DNA from: Octopus sinensis
Lineage: Eukaryota
NCBI RefSeq assembly: GCF_006345805.1
Contig: NW_021836794.1
Span: 1 to 22,673, forward strand
Direction: 5' to 3'
Length of the DNA stretch: 22,673 nt
Positions 38 to 22,299 of the stretch are shown here, piece by piece; the stretch's first letter is position 1; each line of letters begins with the position of its first letter. The notes under the pieces are model-generated. The model had not been told where the DNA came from, did no database searches, and saw only the letters and a program-made list of their open reading frames with translations. The translations under genes were made by a program, and so were the position numbers.

Positions 38-410
<373 letters not shown>

Positions 411-3030: not shown

Positions 3031-6025
3031 ATAACTTAGAATAACTTAGAAAGGCTTTTGCCAGTATTGGCCCAGGCCATGTCTAACTTAATAGCACCAC
3101 CTGGCGAAGTCTTTCAGTTCAGGATTTGGGCACTGAGGCCCATTCGAGCAGAGAGTTATTGTTTGCGGAGACATATCCGGGTGTGGGTGGTTTGTCCGGG
3201 TCTGTTTGAAGGAATTTGTCCAATGACTTCTTGAATTTTGTGTGGTCAGTTTCTGTTTTGACGTGTCCTGGTGTAATGTTGAAGAGAGCGGGTCCAATTG
3301 AGGTGAAATAGTTGTGCCGTATTGTCGTTATGTGATGCGATTTAGATTTTGTTGTGGACGGATGGAACGTGGTCCAAGCCTTGGATGCATTTTGAAGGTG
3401 ATGCCAACATCATTCGGACAGTGCTGATGGAATATTTTCCACATCATACAGATAATGTAGCGTTCACGGCGTCGTTGGAGTGAATACAGTTTCAGCTTCT
3501 CTAGTTTACCCCAGTAGTCAAGGTCTGACATGCCATCTACTACCTTTTTGTGATTGACCTTTGGGGAGCTTCAATTCTCATGATATTTTGTTTTGTGTAG
3601 GGAGACCACAGTGGACAGCAGTATTCAAGGTGGGGTCGGGCAAAAGTGGAGAAGAGAAGCATAATGGTGTGGGAATCTCTCGACTGGAAGGTTCTGAGAA
3701 TCCAGGAACACATTCTGCGTGCCATATCAACTTTGCTGCTTATATGTGTAGCCCAGCTTATGTTGTTGTCCACTGTTACTCCCAAGTCTCTGATGCTGTT
3801 AGACGCCATGAGAATTTCTCCAGAAGGAAGGGAGTATGGGAGTTTTAGAGCGTCCTCCCTTCCAATGTGGATCAGTTCGAATTTGTCTTCGTTTAGTAAC
3901 ATGTTATTCTTTTCCGCCCATTGGAGAACAGCCAGTAGGTCTGACTGAAGGCTTATTCGGTCATCCACGCCATTGATGACCTTCTGGAGCTTGGAATCAT
4001 CAGCGAAAGTTCTGACGTTATTGTGTTTGATGGTGTCAGTAATATCATTAATGTAGATGATGAAGAGAAGTGGGTCCAACACAGTGCCTTGTGGGACACC
4101 ACTGCTGACTTTGGCTGGGCTGGATTTGACTCCTTCGACTACAACATGTTGGGTTCTGTTAGACAGGAAGCACTTGATCCACTGCAGCAGCTTTCCAGTG
4201 ACACCAATATTGGACAGCTTTCTCAAAAGGATCTTATGATCAACCCTGTCAAAGGCCTTGCTGAAATCAAGGAAGATGACATCAGTGTTGGAACCCTCTC
4301 CCAAGGCTCTCAAAACGTCATCAAAATGATGCAGTAGCTGCATCAGGCAATCCCTTCCATTACGGAATCCATGCTGGTTGGAGTTCAGCATATCATGACT
4401 CTCAAGGAAATGAGTCATACGCGATCTCAGCACTCTCTCAAATACCATAATGATATGAGAGGTGAGTGAGATTGGACGGTAATTCACGGCAAGCGATTTG
4501 TTTCCTTTTTTGAAAACTGGGAATACAAACTGGGATAGGTCTTCTGGTATATATCCAGCATCCAGTGAGTTCCGCCACAGATTGGCTCAAGTGGGTGCAA
4601 GTTGGTGTTGACACATCTTCAAGACACAAGCAGGGAACCTATCGGGACCTACTGCTGATTTATGCTTCATTTCCTTTATTGCTGCTAAGACATCAGTAGC
4701 ACCAAAGGTTATGTCCGATAAAGTGTATTGGGGAGTAACATCACTGATACAGACCAGATCAGTCATATCAGGATTGCTGAAAACAGAGCAATATTGTTTC
4801 TGCAATATCTCTCCCATGGTTTTGGCATTGTCTTGAAGAGTACCATTTTCATCAATCAGAGGGCCAACAGTAGAACCAGTGACTCTGTGTTTTTTTGCAA
4901 ATGAAAAGAATACTTTGGGATTGAGTTTGATCTTCTCAATGGCCCAGGCCTCTTCAGCTCTTCTCTGACTATTGATGATAGACATCATGTTGTTTTGGAG
5001 TTTATGTTTTTTAATCTCTAGCGACGAGATGGCAGTCAGGTTGGTGTGTTGCTGTTGACAGTATTTCAGCTCGTTGGTTTTTTTTGTTAATTCTTTTAAT
5101 TTTCCTGATGAGAGATTTTCTATTTCTAGGGATTCGACACTTAGATTTGTTTGCAGATCTTAATGGGGTGTGGTTTGCACATACGTTCGTAATGGTGTCT
5201 ACAAATGACTGCCAGGACTTTTTGATGTTAGTGGGTGTGTATGTGTGCGTGAAGGACCAATCGACTTGTGCAAGATTATTATTGATCGCTTCCCAGTTTG
5301 CATTGTGGAAATCCATAGTGTCAAATGGATGAACAGGAGGGATGACATTTGTTTTGCATTTTGGCCGGTGAAATCTCAGATCACAGAGAACCATGTCATG
5401 GTCGGAGAGTAGGGTTTTCTCCACTGCAATATTGTGGATAGTATCAGTGTGATTGCTGAAAATTAAGTCTAAGACGTTTTTGTGACATCTCGTTGGTTCG
5501 GGCACCAGTTGGGACAGGAAGAAATCATCCATGAAGTCAAGAAGCGATTCCACTGCCTCCCTGTCAGGGGTTGAGAGAGAAGAACCTGGCGGCAGACTGT
5601 TTGTAGACCAGTCAACCCCGGGAAGGTTGAAGGCTCCCGTCATTAAAATGTTGTCCGGTTGACACTGCTGAATGAAACACTTTATGTTGTTGAGGCATTC
5701 CTTGAAGCATGGTAGGGGCGTTTGGGGTGGTCTGTAGAGCCCAACTACTGTTAAGTTGTTGGTTTGACTGAATATAGCGACTGCTTCGCAGTATCCATTG
5801 GAAAATATGTTCATAGCTTCTGTTGAGAATGAATCATGAACATAAATGGCAGTCCCACCCTTTCTTCTGCCAGCACGATCAGCACGAATGGCTTTGAAAT
5901 TTTTAACTTTCACCTCGGCTTCCAAGTGGAGGTCACTAAGATGGGTTTCAGTGAGGACGAAGAAAGGGATGTGGTTTGGATGGGCATCGATCCAGTCCTC
6001 CAGGAATTTTATCTTCCATTTTTGA

Positions 6026-6558: not shown

Positions 6559-6780
6559 AACTTTTCTGGTTATTTTCTGATTTATACACTTAATTTTTCA
6601 ATTATTTGACTGCGGCCATTGTGGAGCAATGCCTTTATTCGTGCAAATCGACCCCAGGACTTATACTTTGTAGGCCTAGTATTTAAACTATCGGTCCCTT
6701 TTCCCGAACCGCTAAGTTCGGGGAATTGTACACACCAGCACCCGTTGTCCAGCACCGAGAAATAAACAGACATTACAAAA

Positions 6781-6831
<51 letters not shown>

Positions 6832-7010
6832 CATATATATATATTCCATGCCGCAGCAGCGCCTTTATTCGCGAAATTCGAACCCAATACTTATTTTTTG
6901 TAGGCCTAGTATTTAATCTATTTTCTCTTTTGACGAAACGGTAAGTTACGGGGACATGAACACACCAGCACCGGTTGTCAAGCGGTGTCGGGGGATAAAC
7001 AGACATACAA
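6559..7010 (-). mobile_element. Composite of two SINE fragments with (CA)n(TA)n; paralog of 1-410
   Basis: Aligns by eye to 1-410 from AACTTTTCTGGTTATTTTCTG to GGGATAAA..ACATACA. This copy retains about 95 bp that the first copy lacks. Confidence 0.8.
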
Positions 7011-7062: not shown

Positions 7063-7145
7063 CTGTCAATAATATTCTTGTTTGGAAATACTAAATACAT
7101 CATAAACTATGTACTACAGACATTACACAACATATGTACTATATT

Positions 7146-7503
7146 TTATAAGCGATTTAAAAAAAAACACAAAAACCGTTAGATTCACTTCAACATTTCA
7201 TTTTAATTTGTTCAAATCTTTTCGTCACTTTCCGACCGTGACCTGTTCACTGACAAAGCTTCATATATATATATATATATATATGCATATATATATATAT
7301 TACGGAGATGTACTTGCATAGCAAGTGACTTGATCTGAGATCGTGTGCTGGAACGAAAACAATTGCAGCGTGGAAGGTGTTTATAAGCGATTTAAGAAAC
7401 ACACAAAAACCGTTAGATTCACTTCAACATTTCAATTGAATTTGTTCAAATCTTTTCCTCACTTTCCGACCGTGACCTGTTCACTGACAAAGCTTCATAT
7501 GTA

Positions 7504-7534
<31 letters not shown>

Positions 7535-7752
7535 TACGGAGATGTACTTGCATAGCAAGTGACTTGATCTGAGATCGTGTGCTGGAACGAAAATAATTGC
7601 AGCGTGGAAGGTGTTTATAAGCGATTTAAGAAACACACAAAAACCGTTAGATTCACTTCAACATTTCAATTGAATTTGTTCAAATCTTTTCCTCACTTTC
7701 CGACCGTGACCTGTCCACTGACAAAGCTTCATATGTATATATATATATATAC
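7146..7752 (-). repeat. Tandem repeat, 234-bp period (~2.6 units); each unit is a ~200-bp element plus a (TA)n spacer
   Basis: The motif TTTGTTCAAATCTTTTC recurs at 7207, 7441 and 7675. Strand is given as that of the hammerhead-like motif. Confidence 0.95.
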
Positions 7753-8802: not shown

Positions 8803-9239
8803 TAGTTATCGCCATACTAATATGGCATTCTTATGAAAATAAGAATAAAGCTGTCCGCTTATTAGCTCCATGAGGCCATCGCCTTAAGTTAGCTATTTGA
8901 TACACAAACTGTATCCATATAACCTTCGAACAAGGGAGGTCAGTCGCTCCACACTAATTGACCGAAGCTAGGTAAATAAAACCTTCGAACAGAGATTGTC
9001 AGAAGCGACACCTACTGGTCTGGCTAGGCTGCATTGAAAAGGGGCAATACCCCGAAACGCGTCTGTAGCTGCCGGTCAAGTAGTGTGGAGCGACTGACCT
9101 CCCTTGTTCGAAGGTTATATGGATACAGTTTGTGTATCAATAGCTAACTTAAGGCGATGGCCTCATGGAGCTAATAAGCGGACAGCTTTATTCTTATTTT
9201 TATATAGATGCCATATTAGTATGGCGATAACTATTATTT
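8797..9239 (+). mobile_element. Fold-back non-autonomous element with hammerhead motif (Penelope-like pLTR / retrozyme-type)
   Basis: Inverted arms 8797-8964 and 9073-9239 (~168 bp, near-identical) around a 108-bp spacer that carries most of the hammerhead motif. (TA)n lies immediately to the left. Confidence 0.7.
9020..9075 (+). ncRNA. Type I hammerhead ribozyme, U3:A8 core variant
   Basis: Stem I GCUGCA (9028-33) / UGUAGC (9064-69), extended by CUGGC/GCCGG. Core UUGAAAA (9034-40). Stem II GGGG-CAAUA-CCCC. GAAA (9054-57). Palindromic stem III ACGCGU. GUC cleavage triplet at 9061-63. Confidence 0.8.
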
Positions 9240-9253
9240 TCCGGGAACGCTGC

Positions 9254-9294
9254 CGTTGTTCTCTTTTAGAGAGACTTAGTAATTTTAATATTTC

Positions 9295-9337
<43 letters not shown>

Positions 9338-9381
9338 TATATAATATATTAAAATTACTAAGTCTCTCTAATAGAACAACG
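9254..9381. repeat. ~37-bp inverted repeat enclosing (TA)n
   Basis: CGTTGTTCT..TTAGAGAGACTTAGTAATTTTAATAT (9254-9291) is the reverse complement of 9346-9381. Confidence 0.85.
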
Positions 9382-9410
9382 CATATATAGATATATATAT
9401 ATGATATATT

Positions 9411-9581
9411 AAGCTTTGTCATGAACAGGTCACCGTCTCAAAGCGACGAAAATATTTGGGACATCTAACGGTTTTGTGTTCTTAAATGGCTTATAAACAC
9501 CTTCCATGATGAAATTGTTTTCGTTCCAGCACACGATATCAGATCAGGTCACTTGCTATGCAAGTACATCTCCGTAATATA

Positions 9582-9662
<81 letters not shown>

Positions 9663-9863
9663 GAAGCTTTGTCAGTGAACAGGTCGCGGTCGGAAAGCGA
9701 CGAAAATATTTTAACAAATTCAATTTAAATTTTGAAGTGAATCTAACGGTTTTTGTGAGTTTCTTAATCGCTTATAAACACCCACCTTCCACGCTGCAAT
9801 TATTTTCGTTCCAGCACACGATCTCAGACCAGGTCACTTGCTATGCAAGTACATCTCCGTAAT
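9411..9863 (+). repeat. Two more units of the 234-bp family, inverted relative to 7146-7752
   Basis: AAGCTTTGTCA..CATCTCCGTAAT at 9411-9578 (internally deleted) and 9664-9863, separated by (TA)n. Confidence 0.93.
9668..9718 (+). ncRNA. Hammerhead-like motif with putative G3:C8 swapped core
   Basis: Stem I UUUGUCA / UAACAAA (6 of 7 pairs). Core GUGAACA. Stem II GUCGC/GCGAC with one extra G. GAAA. Palindrome AAAAUAUUUU. Predicted triplet UUU. The 7207-7257 copy has compensatory GUCAC/GUGAC. Confidence 0.45.
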
Positions 9864-10494: not shown

Positions 10495-11697
10495 GGGGGT
10501 ATGGAGAAAATCAGGTGTAGTGTTGGTGAATCTCAGGAAGCATGGAAGTTTTGAAGGATGCAGTGCTCCGACAACTAACAACTGATGCCGGCAGTTTGTT
10601 CCATGCTTGTGTGTGTATGGAGGGGAGAAGATCAGGTGTAGTGTTGGCGAATCTCAGGAAGCATGGACGTTTTGAAGGATGCAGTGCTCCGACAACTAAC
10701 ACTGATACCGGCAGTTTGTTCCATGCCTCAGTGTGTGTATGGAGGGAGAAGATCAGGTGTAGTGTTGGCGAATCTCAGGAAGCATGGAAGTTTTGAAGGA
10801 TGCAGTGCTCCGACAACTAACAACTGATGCCGGCAGTTTGTTCCATGCTTGTGTGTGTATGGATGGGAGAAAATGAAGTGTAGTGTTTGGTGAATCTCAG
10901 GAAGCATGGAAGTTTTGAAGGATGCAGTGCTCCGACAACTAACAACTATGCCGGCATTTTGTTCCATGCTTCAGCGTGAGTATGGAGGGAAAGATCAGGT
11001 GTAGTGTTGCGAATCTCAGGAAGCATGGAAGTTTTGAAGGATGCAGTGCTCCGACAACTACAAACAACTGATGCCGGCAGTTTGTTCCATGCTTGTGTGT
11101 GTATGGATGGGAGAAAATGAAGTGTAGTGTTGGTGAATCTCAGGAAGCATGGAAGTTTTGAAGGATGGTGCTCCGACAACTAACAACTGATGCCGGCATT
11201 TTGTTCCATGCTTCAGCGTGAGTATGGAGGGGAAAGATCAGGTGTAGTGTTGGCGAATCTCAGAAGCATGGAAGTTTTGAATTGCGTGCTCCGACAACTA
11301 CACTGATGCCGGCAGTTTGTTCCATGCTTGTGTGTGTATGATGGGAGAAATCAAGTGTAGTGTTGGTGAATCTCAGGAAGCATGGAAGTTTTGAAGGATG
11401 CAGTGCTCCGACAACTAACAACTGATGCCGGCAGTTTGTTCCATGCTTCAGCGTGTGTATGTAGCGGAGAAAATCAGGTGTAGTGTTGGCTAATCTCAGG
11501 AAGCATGGAAGTTTTTGAAGGATGCAGTGCTCCGACAACTAACAACTGATGCCGGCAGTTTGTTCCATGCTTCAGCGTGGTATGGAAGGGACAAAATCAG
11601 GTGTAGTGTTGGCGAATCTCAGGAAGCATGGAAGTTTTGAAGGATGCAGTGCTCCGATAACTAACAACTGATGCCGGCAGTTTGTTCCATGCTTCAG
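10495..11697 (-). repeat. Ten tandem ~120-bp units, each the extreme 3' end of the adjacent CR1-like LINE
   Basis: GTGTAGTGT recurs at about 10515, 10635, 10756, 10878, 10999, 11122, 11242, 11355, 11478 and 11601. The unit translates AWNKLPASVVSCRSTASFKTSMLPEIRQHYT* plus a short UTR. Confidence 0.93.
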
Positions 11698-12243
11698 CAA
11701 CTCTCAGCGTGAAAAAATGTTTCCTGAAGTCATGGGAGCTGTGCTGTTTTCTGACTTTCTAAATATGACCACGGGTGTTAGATGGGTGGAGTTTGAAAAG
11801 GTGCTCAGAGTTATTGTTTGTAAGATGGTTAATAATTTTATGGGTGTCTGCCAAGTCAGCTGCCAGACGTCGGTTTTCAATGTATCCATGCCCAGGGAAG
11901 TAAGGCGTTCAGAATATGGCAAATTCCTGATGGAGGGTATTCTTTTGGTTGCACATCGCTGAACGGCTTCCAGACGATTGATATCCTGGGCAAGAAAGGG
12001 GTTCCAGACCGGTGATGCAAATTGCAGGTGAGATCTTACCATAGCTATATAAAGCCGCAGATAGATAGTCGGAGAGCGGCTCACAAAGGACTTGGTGAGT
12101 GATGCCAAGACACCCTCGGCCTTCTTGGCAATTTTAGCAATGTGTTTTGTCCAACACGAATCTCTGTCGACAATAATACCCAGGTCACGTTCACAAGAAG
12201 ACTTTTTGAGATTAGTGTTGTGGAGGGAGTAATTGGACGCTGG
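11580..12243 (-). mobile_element. CR1-like LINE 3' fragment (family 3), 5'-truncated
   Basis: Translation ERDLGIIVD..WTKHIAKIAKKA..LYIAMVRSHLQFASPVWNP..LEAVQRCATKRI..YSERL, then after a frameshift TRGH..FFTLRVAEAWNKLP. Confidence 0.88.
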
Positions 12244-12420: not shown

Positions 12421-15035
12421 GCGCCCTTTTCAAGCCTAGCCTAACCCTAACCCTCATGGGCCCGGTTTCCCGGTTTCTGTGGCGTATGTGTTCCCCCACC
12501 CTCTGCGTTACCCAAGAAACAGGAAGAAAGTATGAGAGAAAGTTGGGGCGAAAAAGTAGAACAGGGGGTCGCCACCGACCCCTGCCGGAGCCTCGTGGAG
12601 CTTTTAGGTGTTTTCGCTCAATAAACACACACAACGCCCGGTCTGGGAATCGAAACCGCGATCCTCCGACCACGAGTCCGCTGCCCTAACCACTGGGCCA
12701 TTGCGCCTCCATAAAAATTTCGCCCTTTTCAAGCCTAGCCGGGCTCGTGGGCCCGGTTTCCCGGTTTCTGTGGCGTATGTGTTCCCCCTCCCCTCAGCGT
12801 TACCCAAGAAACAGAAAGAGAGAGTGAGAAAAAGTTCTGGCAAATGAGTACAACAGGGGTCGCCACCGACCCCTACCGGAGTCTCGTAGAGCTTTTAGGC
12901 GTTTTCGCTCAATTGAAGCACTCCGTCGGTTACGACGACGAGGGCTCCGTTTGATCCGAATCAACGGAACAGCCTGCTCGTGAAATTAACGTGTAAGTGG
13001 CTGAGCACTCCACAGACACGTGCACCCTTAACGTAGTTCTCGGGGATATTCAGCGTGACACAGAGAGTGACAAGGCCGGCCCTTTGAAATACAGGTACAA
13101 CAGAAACAGGAAGTAAGAGTGAGAGAAAGTTGTGGTGAAAGAGTACAACAGGGGTCCCCACAATCCCCTGCAGGAGCACTCCGTCGGTTACGACGATGAG
13201 AGTTCCGGTTGATCCGAATCAACGGAACAGCCTGCACGTGAAATTAACGTGTAAGTGGCTGAGCACTCCACAGACACGTGCACCCTTAACGGAGTTCTCG
13301 GGGATATTCAGCGTGACACAGAGAGTGACAAGGCCGGCCCTTTGAAATACAGGTACAACAGAAACAGGAAGTAAGAGTGAGAGAAAGTTGTGGTGAAAGA
13401 GTACAACAGGGGTCCCCACAATCCCCTGCAGGAGCACTCCGTCGGTTACGACGATGAGAGTTCCGGTTGATCCGAATCAACGGAACAGCCTGCACGTGAA
13501 ATTAACGTGTAAGTGGCTGAGCACTCCACAGACACGTGCACCCTTAACGGAGTTCTCGGGGATTTCAGCGTGACACAGAGAGTGACAAGGCCGGCCCTTT
13601 GAAATACAGGTACAACAGAAACAGGAAGAAAGAGTGAGAGAAAGTTGTGGTGAAAGAGTACAACAGGGGTCGCCACCGACCCCTGCCGGAGCCTCGTGGA
13701 GCTTTTAGGTGTTTTCGCTCAATAAACACTCACAACGCCCGGTACAACAGGTACAACAGAAACAGGAAGAAAGAGTGAGAGAAAGTTGTGGTGAAAGAGT
13801 ACAACAGGGGTCGCCACCGACCCCTGCCGGAGCCTCGTGGTGCTTTTAGGTGTTTTCGCTCAATAAACACTCACAACGCCCGGTACAACAGGTACAACAG
13901 AAACAGGAAGAAAGAGTGAGAGAAAGTTGTGGTGAAAGAGTACAGCAGGGATCACCACCACCCCCAGCAGGAGCACTCCGTCGGTTACGACGATGAGGGT
14001 TCCAGTTGATCCGAATCAACGGAACAGCTTCCTCGTGAAATTAACGTGTAAGTGGCTGAGCACTCCACAGACACGTGTACCCTTAACGTAGTTCTCGGGG
14101 ATATTCAGCGTGACACAGAGAGTGACAAGGGCGGCCCTTTGAAATACAGGTACAACAGAAACAGGAAGTAAGAGTGAGAGAAAGTTGTGGTGAAAGAGTA
14201 CAACAGGGATCACCACAATCCCCTGCCGGAGCCTCGCGGAGCTTTTAGGTGTTTTCGCTCAATAAACACACTCAACGCCCGGTCTGGGAATCGAAACCGC
14301 GATCCTTCGACCACGAATCCGCTGCCCTAACCACTGGGCCATTGCGCCTCCACAAAATAAATTCGCCCATTTCAAGCCTAGCCGGGCTCATGGGCTGGGT
14401 TTCCCGGTTTCTGTGGCGTATGTGACCTCCACCCCAGAAGGACGGGACGTTACCCAAGAAACAGAAAGAGAGAGTGAGAGAAAGTTGTGGCAAATGAGTA
14501 CAACAGGGGTCGCCACCGACCCCTGCCGGAGCCTCGTGGAGCTTTTAGGCGTTTTCGCTCAATAAACACACACAACGCCCGGTACAACAGGTACAACAGA
14601 AACAGGAAGTAAGAGCGAGAGAAAGTTGTGTTGAAAGAGTACAACAGGGGTCGCCACAATCCCCTGCCGGAGCCTCGCGGAGCCTTTAGGTGTTTTCGCT
14701 CAATAAACACACTCAACGCCCGGTCTGGGAATCGAAACCGCGATCCTTCGACCACGAATCCGCTGCCCTAACCACTGGGCCATTGCGCCTCCACATGTGT
14801 ATATATATATAGGCTGGCTCTTTGAAATACAGGTACAACAGAAACAGGAAGTAAGAGCGAGAGAAAGTTGTGGTGAAAGAGTACAACAGGGGTCGCCACC
14901 GACCCCTGCCGGAGCCTCGTGGAGCTTTTAGGCGTTTTCGCTCAATAAACACACACAACGCCCGGTCTGGGAATCGAAACCGCGATCCTCCGACCTCGAG
15001 TCCGCTGCCCTAACCACCGGGCCATTGCGCATCCA
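12421..15035 (-). mobile_element. Cluster of tRNA-derived SINEs and tandemly duplicated SINE modules
   Basis: Four tRNA-like heads (12635-12711, 14276-14352, 14717-14793, 14959-15035), mostly with A-box TGGCCCAGTGG and B-box-like GGTTTCGATTCC. Tail-1 modules start at 12915, 13173, 13431 and 13970. Tail-2 modules lie at ~12421, 12721 and 14363. A 141-bp internal unit starts at 13743, 13884 and 14583. Confidence 0.85.
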
Positions 15036-15100
15036 CTGCAGTTTTTTTTTTAGTGTTCTTGCTATTGCTGGAGTCGCCGAGAATTCAAATAGCTTTGTGC

Positions 15101-15128: not shown

Positions 15129-15374
15129 AGGTGTGTTTCAATGAAAATTCAATAAAAGTAGATGTGGAAGGAACATTGGTGGAGCTTAAAAGACTTCGTC
15201 CTGTTTCGGGTGCACAGTAAAGGCTCCGCGGCCCCGGAAGTACTTGGACCCTTTATCGAGAGCAGTCGACTGCAAAAAACAACAAAAAAACGAAAAATAA
15301 AAATATAATTAAATAAAAAGCAATAAAAAACGTAAAACTGTTTCAATTCCATTTTTTTTATGAAAAAAAAATTC

Positions 15375-16520
15375 GTTTCAGTCATTTCACTGCGGCCATG
15401 CTGGAGCACCGCCTGCCTTTAGCCGAGCAAATCGACCCCGGGACTTATTCTTTGTAAGCCTAGTACTTATTCTATCGGTCTCTTTTGCCGAACCGCTAAG
15501 TGACGGGGACGTAAACACACCAGCATCGACCCTGGGACTTATTCTTTGTAAGCCCAGTACTTATTCTATCGGTCTGTTTTGCCGAACCGCTAAGTGACGG
15601 GGACGTAAACACACCAGCATCGACCCTGGACTTATTCTTTGTAAGCCCAGTACTTATTCTATCGGTCTGTTTTGCCGAACCGCTAAGTGACGGGGACGCA
15701 AACACACCAGCATCGACCCTGGGACTTATTCTTTGTAAGCCCAGTACTTATTCTATCGGTCTCTTTTGCCGAACCGCTAAGTGACGGGGACGTAAACACA
15801 CCAGCATCGACCCTGGGACTTATTCTTTGTTAGCCCAGTACTTATTCTATCGGTCTCTTTTGCCGAACCGCTAAGTGACGGGGACGTAAATACACCAGCA
15901 TCGACCCCGGGACTTATTCTTTGTAAGCCCAGTACTTATTCTATCGGTCTCTTTTGCCGAACCGCTAAGTGACGGGGACGTAAACACACCAGCATCGACC
16001 CCGGACTTATTCTTTGTAAGCCTAGTACTTATTCTATTGGTCTCTTTTGCCGAACCGCTAAGTGACGGGGACGTAACACACCAGCATCGACCCTGGGACT
16101 TATTCTTTGTAAGCCCAGTACTTATTCTATCGGTCTGTTTTGCCGAACCGCTAAGTGACGGGGACGTAAACACACCAGCATCGACCCTGGGACTTATTCT
16201 TTGTAAGCCCAGTACTTATTCTATCGGTCTCTTTTGCCGAACCGCTAAGTGACGGGGACGTAAACACACCAGCATCGACCCCGGGACTTATTCTTTGTAA
16301 GCCCAGTACTTATTCTATCGGTCTCTTTTGCCGAACCGCTTAGTGATGGGGACGTAAACACACCAGCATCGACCCTGGGACTTATTCTTTGTTAGCCAGT
16401 ACTTATTCTATCGGTCTCTTTTGCCGAACCGCTAAGTGACGGGGACGTAAACACACACCAGCATCGACCCGGGACTTATTCTTTGTAAGCCCAGTACTTA
16501 TTCTATCGGTCTCTTTTGCC
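15375..16520 (-). repeat. SINE 3' end followed by 11.6 tandem copies of a ~94-bp internal SINE segment
   Basis: ATCGACCC starts at 15431, 15525, 15619, 15712, 15806, 15900, 15994, 16086, 16180, 16274, 16368 and 16463. The last unit is interrupted at 16520. Confidence 0.95.
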
Positions 16521-16589
16521 GCGTATGTACTAACAAAAATGCGTGTGTGCAACAAACTAGAAAAAATTGCGAGGATGGTGAAAAGGATA

Positions 16590-16669
16590 ATGTGGGACCT
16601 GCGCAGGTTTCAGATTTTTCAAGATATGTCTGCCCACATATACTTGATCTATCTTCATCAGCCAAACAT
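16590..16669 (-). ncRNA. Type I hammerhead ribozyme (canonical CUGAUGA core)
   Basis: Minus strand reads AUGUUUGG-CUGAUGA-AGAU..[hairpin]..AUCU-GAAA-CCUGCGCAGG-UC^CCACAU. Stem III is the 12-nt palindrome ACCUGCGCAGGU. Predicted cut between 16596 and 16595. Confidence 0.8.
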
Positions 16670-17261
16670 ATACCACGACAACCTTTCAGATGTTACCACT
16701 TTAATGCCATTACACTCGACTGAAACGCCGAAACGCTAACAGCACGAGAACGGTGAAGAAGTTTCAATAAATTAGTAATGCAATACTAGAGTATTGCTTT
16801 CCAGTAAAGAATAGCCCGTGAGGGAAAAATATACAAAGAAGTAAATATATGGCCCAACGAAGTACCGATATTTACTGGAAATAGCGAACGTAATAATACG
16901 ACGCTAATGTATAGCTTCACCGCGTATGTAATAGCAAAAATGTTCTCCCTGGAGGTAAGACAATTTTTTCTAGTTTGTTGCACACACGCATTTTTGCTAT
17001 TACATACGCGGTGAAGCTATACATTAGCGTCGTATTATTACGTTCGCTATTTCCAGTAAATATCGGTACTTCGTTGGGCCATATATTTACTTCTTTGTAT
17101 ATTTTCCCCTCACGGGCTACTTTTTACTGGAAAGCAATACTCTAGTATTGCATTACTAATTTATTGAAACTTCTTCACCGTTCTCGTGCTGTTAGCGTTT
17201 CGGCGTTTCAGTCGAGTGTAATGGCATTAATGTGGTAACATCTGAAAGGTTGTCGTGGTAT

Positions 17262-17341
17262 ATGTTTGGCTGATGAAGATAGATCAAGTATATGTGGGCA
17301 GGCATATCTTGAAAAATCTGAAACCGGCGCCGGTCCCTTAT
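17262..17341 (+). ncRNA. Type I hammerhead ribozyme (canonical CUGAUGA core), second copy
   Basis: CUGAUGA 17270-76. Stem II AGAU (17277-80) / AUCU (17316-19), capped by the hairpin UCAAG-U-AUAUG/CAUAU-CUUGA. GAAA 17320-23. Palindrome ACCGGCGCCGGU 17323-34. GUC 17333-35. Stem I is weaker than in the other copy. Confidence 0.75.
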
Positions 17342-17522
17342 TATCCTTTTCTAGGTATTTCATCTTTCAGATGTTCTCCCTGGAGGTAAGACAATTTTTT
17401 CAAGTTTGTTGCACACACGCATTTTTGCTAGTACATACGCGGTGAAGCTATACATTAGCGTCGTATTATTACGTTCGCTATTTCCAGTAAATATCGGTAC
17501 TTCATTGTGCCATATATTTACT

Positions 17523-17524
<2 letters not shown>

Positions 17525-17605
<81 letters not shown>
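17525..17605. repeat. (CT)n(AT)n microsatellite
   Basis: Direct reading. Confidence 0.95.
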
Positions 17606-17607
<2 letters not shown>

Positions 17608-17629
17608 ATGTATGTGTATTGTGTGTTTG

Positions 17630-17828
17630 TTGTGTGTCTGTGTTTGTCCCCCTAGCATTGCCTGACAACCGATGCTGGTTGTTTATGTCCCTGTCACTTA
17701 GCGGTTCGGCAAAAGAGACCGATAGAATAAGTACTGGGCTCACAAAGAATAAGTCCCGGGGTCGAGTTGCTCGATTAAAGGCGGTGCTCCAACATGGCCG
17801 CAATCAAATGACTGAAACAAGTAAAAAC
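17630..17828 (+). mobile_element. SINE 3' half (same family as 15375-16520, opposite orientation)
   Basis: GACAACCGATGCTGG..CTTAGCGGTTCGGCAAAAGAGACCGATAGAATAAGTACT..GGCGGTGCTCCAACATGGCCGCAATCAAATGACTGAAACAAG is the reverse complement of the array unit and its end. Confidence 0.9.
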
Positions 17829-18957: not shown

Positions 18958-21900
18958 TGTTCTTTATTAGCCACATAGGGCTGCACACAGATAGAACAAA
19001 TTACAAGGTAGAGCTTTTCTTTTGGGGTAAAAAAAGGAGAGTGGTGGTTTTCGATCAAAAGGGATCGTAAAAGGAAAGAAAAGGACAAAAAAAAGGGGAG
19101 GGTTAAAAAAAGGGGGGGAGAAAAAAAATGAATAATAGGGATCGTTATCACAGAAATGTCAATATGAAGTGTAAAGGGGAGGACAGGTGAGGTTTACCCG
19201 TGGAAAGAAAAGCCTACGGAAAAGACCACGGTAACCTCGGTCAATGAAGTCACATGTTATATTTCTTTTTTTTTTTTTTTTTTGCAAATAAGCAACTCTC
19301 TGTATTAATTTTTATGGTTCATAGAATCATAGTCAAGTGGCTTCGTCATTCATACGTGCCATCCTTCCTACATTCACCCATCTTTTTTTAAAACATTCAC
19401 TAGACAAAACTTGCCTCTCTTCTCTCACTTTCCTCTTCAAGTGATACTTGAAGAAGTTGATGAGAGATTGACCAGAGAGGAAAGTGTTTGTCTCCAATCC
19501 TTTCAGGCGCGTCCACCAGATACATTCTTTCGCCATAGCCACAAGTATGATAAAATTAGCTCTTCCTTCCCGTTTGAAAGAAGGAGGCGTGACGATATTA
19601 ACGATAGACTCGGCTGATAAACCGACACGTCCCACACGTGACAGCAGTCGTTCGACATAAGCCCACAGGTCGGAAATTGCTGGACACTGCACGATTGCGT
19701 GCAGAGCGGTTTCGTCGCTCTGCCCGCATCTCGGGCAGGTCGGCCCCGTGTTTCTCGAGCCATGCCTATAGAGCTTATCCCGAACGGGTAGCGCTTCTCG
19801 GTAGCACCGCCAGGCCAGGGATCTCTGGAAGTTGTCCATAGGTCCCGGCCGAAAGTCGTTTGAAACAGGCGGGTCAGGTATTCCCTCGACGCCCAGGTTG
19901 CCCCGAGCTCGTCGTCCTACTCCTCCACTAATCCCCTATAGAATGCTTTGGTTGTGTTGAAGTCACTCAAGGTCGACCCGGGACGGCAGAGTTGCTTGAG
20001 AGCAACGCGACACTCGCGGTGCCATTCGCCCTTCCTCGGCCTCTTTTGATCCACGACTGTAGTTCGGTCATGGAGACGAGTTGCGGGAATGCGTGCCTCA
20101 CAAACGGCGACCACACCTGTTCACCGTCGTCTACATAGAGCCGGGGATGTCACAGTCTCAGCGCGTGTCTGCGCATCATCAACCACGGCATGCCCAGCCC
20201 TCCTTTTAACGGGTGTTGACAGCAAATGGATCGCCTGACCATCGGGACGCATCCTTTCCACAAGAAGCGGAAGAGGATGCGTTCTAGTTTGGTGATGGTA
20301 GGGTCGGGACAAGGTACGACTGTCAGGCGGTAGTAGATGATGGACGCGATGTACGCGTTCACCACCTCCGCCCGACCTTTTAGGGACAGTTTCCTCTCGG
20401 CCCATTGCTGGGCGAGAGTGACCACCCTACTCGTTATCTCGTTCCAGTTCTTCTCCATTTGGAGGTCCGGACCGAACCAGACCCCGAGCAACTCAACCGG
20501 GCCGTCTGTCCAGCGTCCCACGACGGAGGTACTGGTGGACGGCATGGGCTTGCTTCTCCAGGTGCCGAGCCACAAGCCCTGACTTTTCCCGGTTAATTTT
20601 TGCTCCTGTCACCGCTTCGTAGTCTTTCAGTGTCTCGCCGACCCGCTCGATGTGCTCGTGGCTTGACACTATGACGGTGACGTCGTCCGCGTATGCAGAC
20701 ACGCTCGTCCCGCATCCCAATTCTCGCGGGATGCCCCTTAGAGTCGCCAGCTTCCGCAGTAGTGGCTCAAGAGTCAATACGTATAGAAGCGCCGAGAGGG
20801 GGCATCCCTGACGGACCGAACGTGCAATGTCGAAAGGTCTCGATAGATGTCCATTTACGCGAATTACCGAACGGATGCTCTGTACAAGGCAGCTATCCAG
20901 CCGCGGAAAACGGGACCGAAACCAGCCGCTCTCAGGACTGCCTCCAAGTATCGATGGTCTACCCTATCAAAGGCTTTCGATTGATCCAAGTTGATCAGGG
21001 CCCCACCCATGCCAGGTTCGTTAACTACCCCTGTCTATGATGTAGCGCATCAGATGGAGGTTGTCATGGATGCTCCGGCCCGGCACGGCGCATGTTTGTG
21101 CGTTGTCGACCAGTTTCTCGATGACAAGCGCCAACCTCTTGGCTAACACCTTTGTCAAAATTTTCAGGTCTGCATTGAGCAGCGTGATTGGTCTAAAGTT
21201 ATCTATAATGTTTCCCTTGTTTGGATCTTTCTTCAGCAGAGTTACAGCTCCTCGACTCACAAAACCGGGTATGCTCCCGTTTTGCTGCCAGTTGTAGTAT
21301 ACCGCTGCCAAGACGTCTTCAAACAAGTCTGGCATACAATTGTAAAACTCGTAGGGTAGACCATCCAAACCCGGTGATTTGTCCCTCGAGCATTCTGCTA
21401 TCGCTTCCTGCACTTCCGCCGCCGTGATGGCACCTTCGCAGCACCCTGCCTTTCTTGTCGAGAGTCGTGGCAGGCTATGTAGGTAGGCACTGAAGTCCAC
21501 CCTACGTTCTTGCCATCCACTCGTTCCGAACAGTCGGGCAAAATGCTGCTGAAAGGCCTCACACATTTTACTTGGCTCGAGCAATTCGCGCCCCTGTTCA
21601 TCTACCAGTGACCGAATGGTGGCTTTGTTGCCCTGTTGCGCCTCTGCCACCCGGGCCTCTCTCGCGGCTCCAACACCTTCGTTCCTTAGAGCACGCATCC
21701 TAGCTCTGACAGCACATCCTTCGTGTTTGGCGTTGAAGTGTTGGTCGAGGGCCAACCTCGCCGCCAAAACGTCGGATGCGATGCCGCTTCTAATTGCCTC
21801 TTCTAGCTTCTTAACTAGCTCACCCTCTACTCTATTTCTATCTATGGCTAGTGCTTTGCTGTACCTAATCGCTTCTGCTTTTACTGCTCTCTTGAGGGCA

Positions 21901-22275
21901 AACCACCATTTGTTGTTGATGATGGCTCCCGTCAAAGCCCTCTTTACTTGTGTGCTAATCCGGTCTCTGAAAACTTGTCTGGACGGGAATGAGGCGTTCA
22001 GTTTCCAGTACCCAGGACCCTGTCTATGTGCCTTATCTAAGTCTAGCGTACACGTCACCAATTTGTGATCCGTGTAGCTGACTGTGTGGAATTGTGGACA
22101 TCCTAAGTTATCCTTGTCTACTGTCCTACACAGTATCTTATCTAGATACGATCTCGACGACCCACTGCGGTTGCTCCATGTCCACGTTGGTGCATTTGGG
22201 TGGTCGAGTCGGTACCTGTCAGACAGTTGGAATCGTCTGAGCAGGTCTCTGAGGCATTTGCATCCCCTTCTGTTT
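18958..22275 (-). mobile_element. Tx1/L1-clade non-LTR retrotransposon, 5'-truncated within APE, flanked by (GATA)n on both sides
   Basis: Motifs TWTWSN..SYLDKI..TDH, GPGYWKLN, KSPGLDGLPYEFY, FRPITLLNADLKILTKVLAKRL, LDQSKAFDRVDH, VRQGCPLS, YADD, LSLKGRAEVVN and GGLGMP. C-X2-C-X8-H-X4-C knuckle at 19684-19737. Stop at 19333; AATAAA at 18963-68 (minus strand). Confidence 0.92.
19333..22275 (-). pseudogene. Tx1/L1 ORF2 remnant (partial APE, RT, CCHC)
   Basis: Reassembled from ORF-track pieces 21021-22286, 20493-20777, 20150-20575, 19917-20114 and 19333-19839. Frameshifts lie near 21030, ~20885 and ~20580, a stop at 20150-52, and further breaks downstream. Confidence 0.88.
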
Positions 22276-22299
22276 GATAGATACATAGATAGATAGATT

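What the first reader, a model, noticed from the sequence alone, without database searches (positions are those of the whole stretch)
16590..17341. Two hammerhead copies whose palindromic stem III differs by a compensatory double change
Seen: both copies have CUGAUGA, stem II AGAU/AUCU with a long capping hairpin, GAAA and a GUC site. Stem III is ACCUGCGCAGGU in one and ACCGGCGCCGGU in the other: two substitutions, both perfect 12-nt palindromes. The arms are otherwise nearly identical. Known: palindromic stem III allows dimeric cleavage in Penelope-like and retrozyme hammerheads. Inference: selection on RNA structure, so probably a functional ribozyme family with an unusually long stem II extension and an unusually long palindrome. 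Caveat: hairpin-templated repair of a DNA palindrome can also produce paired changes.
Basis: partly seen in the sequence, partly recalled or inferred. Interest (0 to 1): 0.85.

Follow-up and report, generated by a model that had tools for sequence, protein, structure and literature searches.

The report
Paired hammerhead motifs in retroelement repeat
Two mirror-image copies of a roughly 430-base mobile repeat in an animal-type genome each carry a hammerhead-like self-cutting RNA motif of the sort already known from Penelope-like elements and 'retrozymes'; it is probably an ordinary new member of that class, and neither its activity nor its conservation across a family could be tested here.

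Summary
Both copies have CUGAUGA, a 4-bp AGAU/AUCU helix II capped by an interrupted hairpin, GAAA, a 12-nt self-complementary helix III and GUC. Helix III differs only by G-C to U-A at pair 15.4/16.4. A relaxed hammerhead descriptor hits only these two sites in the window, against 1 hit in 1500 shuffled windows.

The motifs lie at the 3' end of a 391-nt body (431-nt period). The repeat is present as two head-to-head, partly tandem copies inserted between a satellite and a microsatellite. This matches published Penelope-like element (PLE) and non-LTR retrozyme insertions, including hammerhead pairs on opposite strands.

The unit is AT-rich (39% GC) and folds unusually well in the hammerhead sense (z -5.1, against -3.0 antisense).

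Weak points:
- No Rfam hammerhead model matches, even at E<=10.
- Pair 10.1-11.1 is A-U, not G-C.
- Helix I is poor, and the predicted minimum-energy fold pairs the catalytic core away.
- Each strand has only one hammerhead at this locus.
- No other family member was found in any reachable collection, so the covariation rests on one pair (chance p about 0.006-0.024).

Verdict: likely a new member of a known kind. Catalysis and selection are unproven.

The parts
16519..16569 (-). Truncated second unit of the minus-strand element (body positions 1 to about 54). Its 3' end abuts the 94-bp satellite with a 3-nt overlap (CCG, 16519-16521).
   Evidence: 96% identity to 16961-17011; satellite ends at 16521.
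16570..16579 (-). 10-nt linker (ACCATCCTCG on the - strand) between the two units of the minus-strand element. It is unrelated in length to the 40-nt linker of the plus-strand element.
   Evidence: alignment.
16580..16942 (-). Minus-strand copy of the unit, 5'-truncated at body position 29. This is the left arm of the inverted repeat.
   Evidence: I1; 97.5% identity, 9 mismatches.
16590..16667 (-). Hammerhead-like motif, minus-strand copy. Helix I 3' strand 16590-16595; cut after 16596; helix III 16597-16608 (ACCUGCGCAGGU); core TCATCAG 16655-16661; helix I 5' strand 16662-16667.
16940..16960 (+). 5' leader of the plus-strand element, identical to the last 21 nt of the 40-nt linker. ATG 16940-16942 is shared with the end of the minus-strand copy, giving microhomology at the head-to-head junction.
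   Evidence: (D20).
16961..17351 (+). Full 391-nt body of the plus-strand unit. Positions 16989-17351 form the right arm of the inverted repeat.
   Evidence: Fold statistics.
17264..17341 (+). Hammerhead-like motif, plus-strand copy. Helix I 5' strand 17264-17269; core CUGAUGA 17270-17276; helix II 17277-17319; GAA 17320-17322; helix III 17323-17334 (ACCGGCGCCGGU); C17 at 17335 (cut after it); helix I 3' strand 17336-17341.
17352..17391 (+). 40-nt linker ('tail') between the first and second plus-strand units.
   Evidence: Published PLE insertions carry 30-40 bp tails (PMC8557442).
17392..17525 (+). Truncated second plus-strand unit (body positions 1-134). It ends in CTTCT at the start of a (CT)n microsatellite.
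   Evidence: D20, 97%.
17526..17669 (.). (CT)n(TA)n(TG-rich) microsatellite that forms the right-hand target or flank. It is the simple-repeat tail of a minus-strand SINE-like copy at 17670-17822.

Best explanation
The region is a composite insertion of a short, non-coding retroelement of the retrozyme / Penelope-like-element (PLE) type. The body is 391 nt and the period is 401-431 nt depending on the linker.

Layout (shown). Two copies lie head to head. A minus-strand copy of about 1.05 units spans 16942 down to 16519. A plus-strand copy of 1.36 units spans 16940 to 17525. Their 3' ends face outward into a satellite and a (CT)n microsatellite. All three junctions carry 3-5 nt of microhomology. 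Each copy has one non-canonical type I hammerhead 16 nt before the end of the body.

Mechanism (inferred from the published biology of this class, not shown here). In family members with two or more tandem units, a multimeric sense transcript cuts itself after GUC. Cutting most likely goes through a double hammerhead in which two 12-nt self-complementary helix III segments pair into one 12-bp helix. A host ligase closes the monomer into a highly base-paired circle, which a PLE or LINE reverse transcriptase copies into new loci. Priming from both target ends would give the head-to-head structure.

The helix III difference (inferred). The G-C to U-A change separates two family variants. These also differ in the linker and in helix I. 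The change keeps both the hairpin and the self-dimer intact.

Status of this locus (shown). These two copies are truncated and carry one hammerhead per strand, so the locus cannot release unit-length RNA.
For: - Complete hammerhead core and closed helices II and III in both copies.
- The relaxed descriptor hits only these two sites; 1 hit in 1500 shuffled windows.
- Among 118 chance matches to the same core plus 4-bp helix II in metagenomes, only 5 have a helix III of at least 4 bp, and 4% have an inner hairpin as stable as this one.
- Helix III is wholly self-complementary, loop included. Predicted homodimers are -26.5 and -23.5 kcal/mol, hairpins -3.3 and -1.8, and the mixed dimer -14.1.
- Structure-preserving differences between the copies: G-C to U-A in helix III, U.G to U-A closing the helix II loop, and C-G to U.G at 17120.
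- Unit properties match published non-LTR retrozymes (150-450 bp tandem repeats, GC below 45-50%, highly self-paired; PMC7229834). Here the period is 431 nt and GC is 39%. The circular minimum free energy is -123.4 against -93.8+-5.8 for shuffles (z -5.1) with 20 G.U pairs. The antisense strand gives only z -3.0.
- The insertion layout matches published PLE insertions (PMC8557442): partial tandem, an adjacent inverted 5'-truncated copy, a 30-40 bp tail and a microsatellite target.
- Hammerhead pairs 100-700 bp apart on opposite strands are reported for PLEs (PMC4209133).
- The arms are 97.5% alike, but the flanking SINE-like copies are only about 83-90% alike. The different linkers (40 vs 10 nt) argue for two template variants and against a simple local duplication.
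Against: - No Rfam hammerhead family matches at gathering score or at E<=10.
- Pair 10.1-11.1 is A-U. G-C there is the most conserved helix pair after 15.1-16.1 (PMC3088659; PMC4209133).
- Helix I is 2 G-C pairs followed by mismatches (75% of cells paired).
- The predicted local minimum-energy and RNAalifold consensus folds pair UGAUG(A) of the core with the bases just 3' of the cut. The hammerhead fold costs +4.1 kcal/mol in the + copy and +6.4 in the - copy.
- Local hammerhead segments fold no better than their shuffles (z -0.25 to +1.1).
- The unit's z of -5.1 is not unique. 3 of 54 control strand-segments from the same window reach z <= -5.
- No PLE reverse transcriptase or GIY-YIG ORF lies in the window; only LINE-type ORFs do.
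- No second family member was found anywhere.
- Divergence between tandem units of one element (2.6%) equals that between the arms (2.5%). The paired change could therefore have arisen after insertion, where selection on a dead copy is implausible.
Confidence: 0.6

Rival explanations
1. The hammerhead resemblance is fortuitous or a long-dead relic. The 431-nt unit is simply one more structured tandem/inverted repeat in a very repeat-rich region. No self-cleavage occurs. The paired helix III change is chance, or a DNA-level effect on a short palindrome.
For: - No Rfam match.
- A-U at 10.1-11.1, weak helix I, and the core sequestered in the predicted fold.
- At about 7e-4 hits per 22.7-kb window, a gigabase genome should hold tens of chance matches. 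One that landed in a repeat would be amplified.
- The window holds at least five other tandem arrays.
- The covariation is a single event.
- PMC3088659 warns that consensus matches occur by chance.
Against: - The motif sits exactly where PLE and retrozyme hammerheads sit, in a unit of the right size, GC content and insertion layout.
- Helix III is fully palindromic, loop included, which is a family signature.
- Three of the five differences in the hammerhead region keep pairing.
- The unit folds better in the sense direction than the antisense.
Confidence: 0.22
2. The working entity is the 363-bp inverted repeat itself. It would be a fold-back or MITE-like DNA element, or a hairpin-RNA locus giving small RNAs. 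The hammerhead-like sequence would be incidental.
For: - Arms 98% complementary with a 46-nt spacer.
- The centre scores weakly against several miRNA-precursor models, all far below gathering score.
Against: - No terminal inverted repeat plus target-site duplication is seen at the outer ends.
- The outer ends are asymmetric: 54 nt of second unit on one side and 134-155 nt on the other.
- The linkers differ.
- Each arm continues into a tandem second unit. This fits retro-insertion of a multimeric or circular template, not a fold-back transposon.
- The miRNA-model hits only reflect the hairpin shape.
Confidence: 0.07
3. The GC-rich palindrome is the 3' hairpin of a Helitron/Helentron-type rolling-circle DNA transposon. 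In those elements hairpin structure, not sequence, is conserved, and tandem copies arise by read-through.
For: - A 12-nt GC-rich palindrome lies 16 nt before the end of the body.
- The + copy continues ...TTTTCTAG, which resembles a CTRR end.
- A compensatory change in a terminal hairpin would be expected for such elements (from general knowledge, not tested here).
Against: - The - copy has ...TTTTCACC at the same place, so homology ends before any CTRR.
- There is no 5' TC terminus.
- This reading leaves unexplained the adjacent CUGAUGA, helix II and GAAA, which abut the palindrome in exact hammerhead register.
Confidence: 0.03
4. The inverted repeat is an assembly or library artefact, such as a chimeric palindromic read. 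PLE-type structures are known to trouble assemblers.
For: PMC8557442 notes that such structures cause assembly problems.
Against: - The arms differ by 9 substitutions, including transversions.
- The linkers are entirely different and the outer flanks differ. An artefactual palindrome would have near-identical arms.
Confidence: 0.03

Closest known systems
Hammerheads of Penelope-like elements (min-HHRs and their variants in Drosophila virilis, rotifers, shrimps and mosquitoes; Cervera & de la Pena 2014, PMC4209133)
   Same: - Type I topology.
- Short, poor helix I and enlarged helix II.
- Small palindromic helix III that implies dimeric action.
- Motifs often found as pairs 100-700 bp apart on opposite strands.
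- High variability of the motif relative to its surroundings.
- Located in repeats arranged as partial tandems and inverted copies.
   Different: - No PLE ORF in the window.
- A10.1-U11.1 instead of the 'highly conserved' G10.1-C11.1.
- No unpaired base between A9 and 10.1.
- Helix II is 15 bp, interrupted, and spans 43 nt, against 6-8 bp.
- Helix III is 4 bp plus a tetraloop, against 0-2 bp plus loop.
Metazoan non-LTR retrozymes (Cervera & de la Pena 2020, PMC7229834; Li et al. 2026 preprint, 10.64898/2026.07.22.740005)
   Same: - Non-coding unit of 150-450 bp, low GC, tandem arrangement.
- Type I hammerhead.
- Strongly self-paired predicted RNA.
- Co-occurrence with, and derivation from, PLE pseudo-LTRs.
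   Different: - Only 1.05-1.36 units per strand and one hammerhead per strand here. The 'two consecutive complete HHR units' criterion for an active retrozyme is not met at this locus.
- Canonical retrozyme hammerheads have 6-bp helix I, 4-bp helix II and loop-loop contacts. This one does not.
- Expression as circular RNA is unknown.
'HHR_half_core' cases noted in Naiad PLEs (Craig et al. 2021, PMC8557442)
   Same: CUGANGA and GAAA are separated by 35-50 nt, outside the standard descriptors. Here the separation is 43 nt.
   Different: - Those cases were only flagged as core halves, with no helices described.
- Here the gap is filled by a well-formed hairpin, and helix III and the GUC site follow in register.
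- No link to Naiads could be tested.
Newt satellite 2 and avocado sunblotch viroid-type double hammerheads (Forster et al. 1988, as cited in PMC4209133)
   Same: A self-complementary helix III lets two motifs form one extended helix III and cut as a dimer.
   Different: Their monomeric helix III is too weak to fold alone. Here the 4-bp G+C-rich hairpin could suffice for a monomer, so dimerisation is optional, not obligatory.

Membership tests
Hammerhead ribozyme (Rfam RF00163, RF00008, RF02275, RF02276, RF02277) | Match to a curated covariance model | tested here: not met
   No hit at gathering score over the whole window. No hammerhead hit at E<=10 over 16300-17700. The likely causes are the 35-nt insert in helix II and the weak helix I.
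Hammerhead ribozyme (general) | Conserved core C3 U4 G5 A6 N7 G8 A9, G12 A13 A14, A15.1-U16.1, H17 | tested here: met
   All positions are present in both copies.
Hammerhead ribozyme (general) | Three helices around the core | tested here: inconclusive
   Helices II and III are 100% paired. Helix I is 75% paired, with two G-C pairs followed by mismatches. The predicted minimum-energy fold uses a shifted outer helix that pairs the core.
Hammerhead ribozyme (general) | G10.1-C11.1 pair | tested here: not met
   A17277-U17319 in both copies. This pair is highly conserved but not invariant.
Hammerhead ribozyme (general) | Site-specific self-cleavage | not testable with these tools
   Needs in vitro transcription.
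PLE-type hammerhead | Palindromic positions 15.2-16.2 and loop 3 | tested here: met
   ACCGGCGCCGGU and ACCUGCGCAGGU are both perfect 12-nt palindromes. Predicted homodimers are -26.5 and -23.5 kcal/mol.
PLE-type hammerhead | Located in the pseudo-LTR of an element encoding RT plus GIY-YIG endonuclease | tested here: not met
   No such ORF is in the window. The only RT ORFs are LINE-type, with EEP endonuclease or zf-RVT. An autonomous partner elsewhere in the genome cannot be excluded.
PLE-type insertion | Partial tandem plus adjacent inverted 5'-truncated copy, 30-40 bp tail, microsatellite target | tested here: met
   Layout, compared with the description in PMC8557442. That the tail is homologous to PLE tails is an inference.
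Non-LTR retrozyme | Tandem repeat unit of 150-450 bp, GC below 45-50% | tested here: met
   Period 431 nt; GC 39%.
Non-LTR retrozyme | [quoted passage not shown] | tested here: not met
   Each strand carries one complete hammerhead. The second units stop before it, at 17525 and at 16519.
Non-LTR retrozyme | Highly self-paired monomer RNA | tested here: met
   Circular fold z -5.1 in the sense direction and -3.0 antisense; 66% of bases paired. However, 3 of 54 control strand-segments also reach z <= -5.
Non-LTR retrozyme | Many genomic copies; expressed as circular RNA | not testable with these tools
   The source genome and its transcriptome are not in any reachable collection.

The most novel reading that the evidence does not exclude
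This is a distinct hammerhead architecture. Helix II would be a long interrupted hairpin whose internal loop, 4 bp from the core, replaces loop 2. Pair 10.1-11.1 would be A-U. A 12-nt G+C-rich self-complementary helix III would make cleavage depend on self-dimerisation. The G-C to U-A change would then define two dimerisation classes that pair poorly with each other (predicted -14 kcal/mol against -24 to -26 for self-pairs). A competing helix that hides the core would act as an on/off switch protecting the circular monomer. If so, the 'half-core' motifs dismissed in Naiad-type PLEs may be real ribozymes missed by current descriptors.
Probability: 0.1. Interest if true: 0.6.

Novelty: new member of a known kind. 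Interest (0 to 1): 0.35.

Why it matters
If it is active, this would be one more lineage-specific hammerhead-bearing retroelement. It would also be a concrete case in which the standard tools miss a probable hammerhead because helix II is long and 10.1-11.1 is A-U: Rfam covariance models failed here, and helix II lies outside the published RNAmotif-type descriptors. That bears on how completely such ribozymes have been counted in invertebrate genomes, and on whether PLE clades described as lacking hammerheads really lack them. The locus also gives a clean example of a head-to-head, microhomology-joined insertion of a multimeric or circular template. If it is inactive, it is an ordinary decayed repeat.

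Tried and rejected
- Rfam at gathering score, and at E<=10 over the region: no hammerhead family. Only weak miRNA-like hits caused by the hairpin at the centre of the inverted repeat.
- Family search by DNA. A gapped core pattern and two exact 22-24-mers found nothing in viral contigs and prokaryote genome contigs.
- The single metagenome scan used too loose a pattern. It returned 120 unrelated chance matches with no BLAST similarity to the unit. These were reused as a null set.
- Family search through spurious ORFs. A 59-aa ORF across the hammerhead, and a six-frame translation of 1.2 units, found no relatives.
- Source organism. The LINE RT finds relatives at no more than 57% identity (78% over part of its length, on a 786-nt ENA contig). 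The exact ORF is not on record, and neighbouring contigs lack the repeat. Sequence-string searches of the literature found nothing. A keyword search for hammerheads or retrozymes in crustaceans returned only papers with no mention of either. The organism stays unidentified. The repeat and microsatellite content looks like an invertebrate animal genome, but that is my impression only.
- Large segmental palindrome. Rejected, because the flanking SINE-like copies are only about 83-90% alike and homology stops at their ends.
- CpG decay as the cause of the paired change. Rejected, because both changes are transversions (G/T and C/A).
- An alternative register that uses the inner GAAA of CUUGAAAA as G12-A15.1. 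Rejected, because helix II would not close next to the core.
- tRNA-derived SINE check: no tRNA-like sequence in the window.

Full report
1. THE OBSERVATION

On the + strand:
- CUGAUGA lies at 17270-17276.
- AGAU (17277-17280) pairs with AUCU (17316-17319).
- These pairs enclose a 35-nt insert. It folds as a 3x3 internal loop, 5 bp, a one-base bulge, 6 bp and a 6-nt loop.
- GAA (17320-17322) leads into ACCGGCGCCGGU (17323-17334), then C17335.
- The predicted cut is after 17335.

On the - strand:
- The same motif runs from 16667 down to 16590.
- Helix III is ACCUGCGCAGGU (16597-16608).
- The predicted cut is after 16596.

The two motifs sit near the outer ends of a 363-nt inverted repeat (16580-16942 and 16989-17351, 46 nt apart). 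The arms differ at nine positions. Positions 17326 and 17331 are the two sides of pair 15.4-16.4, which is G-C in one copy and U-A in the other. Both changes are transversions, so CpG decay does not explain them.

2. IS IT MORE THAN CHANCE?

- I used a deliberately relaxed descriptor: CUGANGA; at least 4 bp closing helix II with up to 60 nt inside; GAAA; at least 4 bp in helix III; H17; at least 2 bp in helix I. It hits only these two places in the window. It gave one hit in 1500 dinucleotide-preserving shuffles of the window.
- A mis-aimed metagenome scan returned 120 loci unrelated to the unit, holding 118 chance matches to the core plus the 4-bp helix II. Of these 118, five are followed by a helix III of at least 4 bp, and 4% have an inner hairpin as stable as this one.
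- The motif is therefore very unlikely to be accidental in this one window. At about 7e-4 per window, though, a gigabase genome would hold tens of accidental matches.
- For the paired change, nine substitutions thrown at random onto the arm produce a doubly changed, still-pairing pair with p=0.006 inside the hammerhead region and p=0.024 anywhere in the predicted fold.
- Five of the nine differences fall within 38 nt at the 3' half of the motif (p=0.034). PLE hammerheads are reported to be unusually variable.
- With two sequences, formal covariation controls have no power.

3. ANATOMY OF THE LOCUS

The repeat has a 391-nt body, CAAUUUUUUC...CCUUUUC.

The + element is:
- a 21-nt leader (16940-16960);
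- the body (16961-17351);
- a 40-nt linker (17352-17391);
- the first 134 nt of a second body (17392-17525).

Its period is 431 nt.

The - element is:
- the body from position 29 onward (16942 down to 16580);
- a 10-nt linker unrelated to the 40-nt one (16579 down to 16570);
- about 54 nt of a second body (16569 down to 16519).

The 5' ends meet head to head, sharing ATG (16940-16942). The 3' ends face outward. One joins a 94-bp satellite with a CCG overlap. The other joins a (CT)n microsatellite with a CTTCT overlap.

The flanks are two SINE-like copies in opposite orientation. They are only about 83-90% alike, and homology stops at their ends. The 97.5% inverted repeat is therefore not part of a larger segmental palindrome. 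The hammerhead cut site lies 16 nt before the end of the body.

4. COMPARISON WITH PUBLISHED ELEMENTS

- PLE insertions are described as partial tandems, often with an inverted 5'-truncated copy immediately adjacent. They also carry a 30-40 bp tail and show a bias for microsatellites (PMC8557442).
- PLE hammerheads are type I. They have a short helix I, an enlarged helix II and a small palindromic helix III. They act as dimers and cleave poorly in vitro. They are often found as pairs 100-700 bp apart on opposite strands (PMC4209133).
- Metazoan non-LTR retrozymes are tandem units of 150-450 bp with low GC. They are expressed as highly self-paired circular RNAs (PMC7229834). They are now argued to derive from PLE pseudo-LTRs.

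The present unit fits on size, GC content (39%), layout and motif position.

5. RNA-LEVEL EVIDENCE FOR THE UNIT

- The cut-to-cut 431-nt monomer folds, as a circle, at -123.4 kcal/mol. Its shuffles give -93.8+-5.8 (z -5.1). The fold has 20 G.U pairs.
- The antisense strand reaches only -95.3 kcal/mol (z -3.0).
- A virtual 401-nt monomer of the - variant gives z -3.9 in the sense direction and -2.7 antisense.
- The excess of wobble pairs on the hammerhead strand points to an RNA-level structure.
- The support is moderate. Among 54 control strand-segments of the same length from this window, 3 reach z <= -5.

6. WEAKNESSES OF THE RIBOZYME READING

- No Rfam hammerhead model matches, even at E<=10.
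- Pair 10.1-11.1 is A-U. G-C there is the most conserved helix pair after 15.1-16.1.
- Helix I is two G-C pairs followed by mismatches. The - copy is slightly better because A at 1.3 pairs with U at 2.3.
- In both copies the predicted minimum-energy fold and the RNAalifold consensus keep helices II and III. They replace helix I with a shifted helix, in which UGAUG(A) of the core pairs with the bases just 3' of the cut, and G2.1-G2.2 pair with a second CC nine bases further on.
- Forcing the hammerhead fold costs +4.1 kcal/mol in the + copy and +6.4 in the - copy. This may be an inactive conformer of the kind that protects circular forms. It may also simply mean the motif is not an efficient ribozyme.
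- The 12-bp self-dimer of helix III is predicted at -26.5 and -23.5 kcal/mol, against -3.3 and -1.8 for the hairpins. That could drive a double-hammerhead form. The mixed dimer is much weaker at -14.1 kcal/mol.

7. WHAT THE PAIRED CHANGE CAN AND CANNOT SHOW

- The divergence between the two tandem units within the + element (2.6%) is the same as between the arms (2.5%). The nine differences could therefore have arisen after insertion. In that case selection on a truncated single-hammerhead copy is implausible.
- Against that, the completely different linkers cannot come from a few point mutations. They suggest two template variants.
- One further detail is unexplained. Both second units share G where both first units have T (TAGTAC against TATTAC).
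- Only a family-wide alignment can settle whether helix III covaries under selection. No other copy could be found in any reachable collection.

8. RIVALS

- A fortuitous or dead hammerhead in a structured repeat: 0.22.
- The inverted repeat itself as a fold-back or hairpin-RNA element: 0.07. There are no terminal repeats with target-site duplication, the ends are asymmetric and the units are tandem.
- A Helitron-type 3' hairpin: 0.03. The CTRR-like end exists in one copy only. This reading also does not explain the abutting core.
- An assembly artefact: 0.03. The arms, linkers and flanks all differ.

9. VERDICT

The most likely reading is a truncated, head-to-head pair of copies of a PLE-related, retrozyme-like repeat, each with a non-canonical type I hammerhead (confidence 0.6). 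That makes it a new member of a known kind. Its long helix II and A-U at 10.1-11.1 take it outside current models. Catalytic activity, dimer dependence and selection on helix III remain untested. Interest is 0.35.

Noticed in passing
window 38-136, 244-402, 6596-6749, 6846-7001, 15372-15530 (+), 17670-17822 (-): A dispersed SINE-like module of about 150-190 nt, each copy followed by a compound microsatellite tail. Copies are 77-90% alike. No tRNA-like part was found by ARAGORN.
   Followed up: partly
window 15431-16521: The 94-nt 3' part of one SINE-like copy has been amplified into 11.6 tandem copies at 96% identity. The array is cut off at unit position 54 by the minus-strand retroelement copy.
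   Followed up: partly
window 17268-17276 with 17338-17346 (and 16585-16593 with 16655-16663 on the - strand): In both copies the bases just 3' of the predicted cut can pair with UGAUG(A) of the hammerhead core, and a second CC can replace C1.1-C1.2 opposite G2.1-G2.2. This predicted conformer is 4-6 kcal/mol more stable and would switch the ribozyme off.
   Followed up: partly
window 16998 and 16933 versus 17429 and 16533: Both first units read TATTAC where both truncated second units read TAGTAC, although the linkers between the units differ completely (40 vs 10 nt). The shared unit-specific difference on both arms is unexplained.
   Followed up: no
window 3540-5925 (-) and 19333-22286 (-): Two decayed LINE-type retrotransposons. 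One has an EEP endonuclease plus RVT_1. The other has RVT_1 plus zf-RVT. In both, the reading frames are split into several ORFs. The closest database proteins are only 57% identical (78% over part of the length, on a 786-nt ENA contig).
   Followed up: partly
window 7145-7751 with 9479-9767; about 9000-9430: A 234-bp tandem repeat (2.6 copies) has inverted partners about 2 kb downstream (arms 130-143 nt, 92-94% complementary). The 431-nt segment starting at 9000 folds far better than its shuffles on both strands (z about -10.5), as expected for a DNA-level palindrome.
   Followed up: no
window 10499-11698, 12917-14232, 13606-15036: Three further satellite-like arrays with periods of 121/243, 258 and 141/242 bp. 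None matched an Rfam family or the hammerhead descriptor.
   Followed up: partly
window 20100-20530 (-): A segment inside the second LINE folds unusually well on its sense strand (z -6.4, against -3.8 on the other strand).
   Followed up: no
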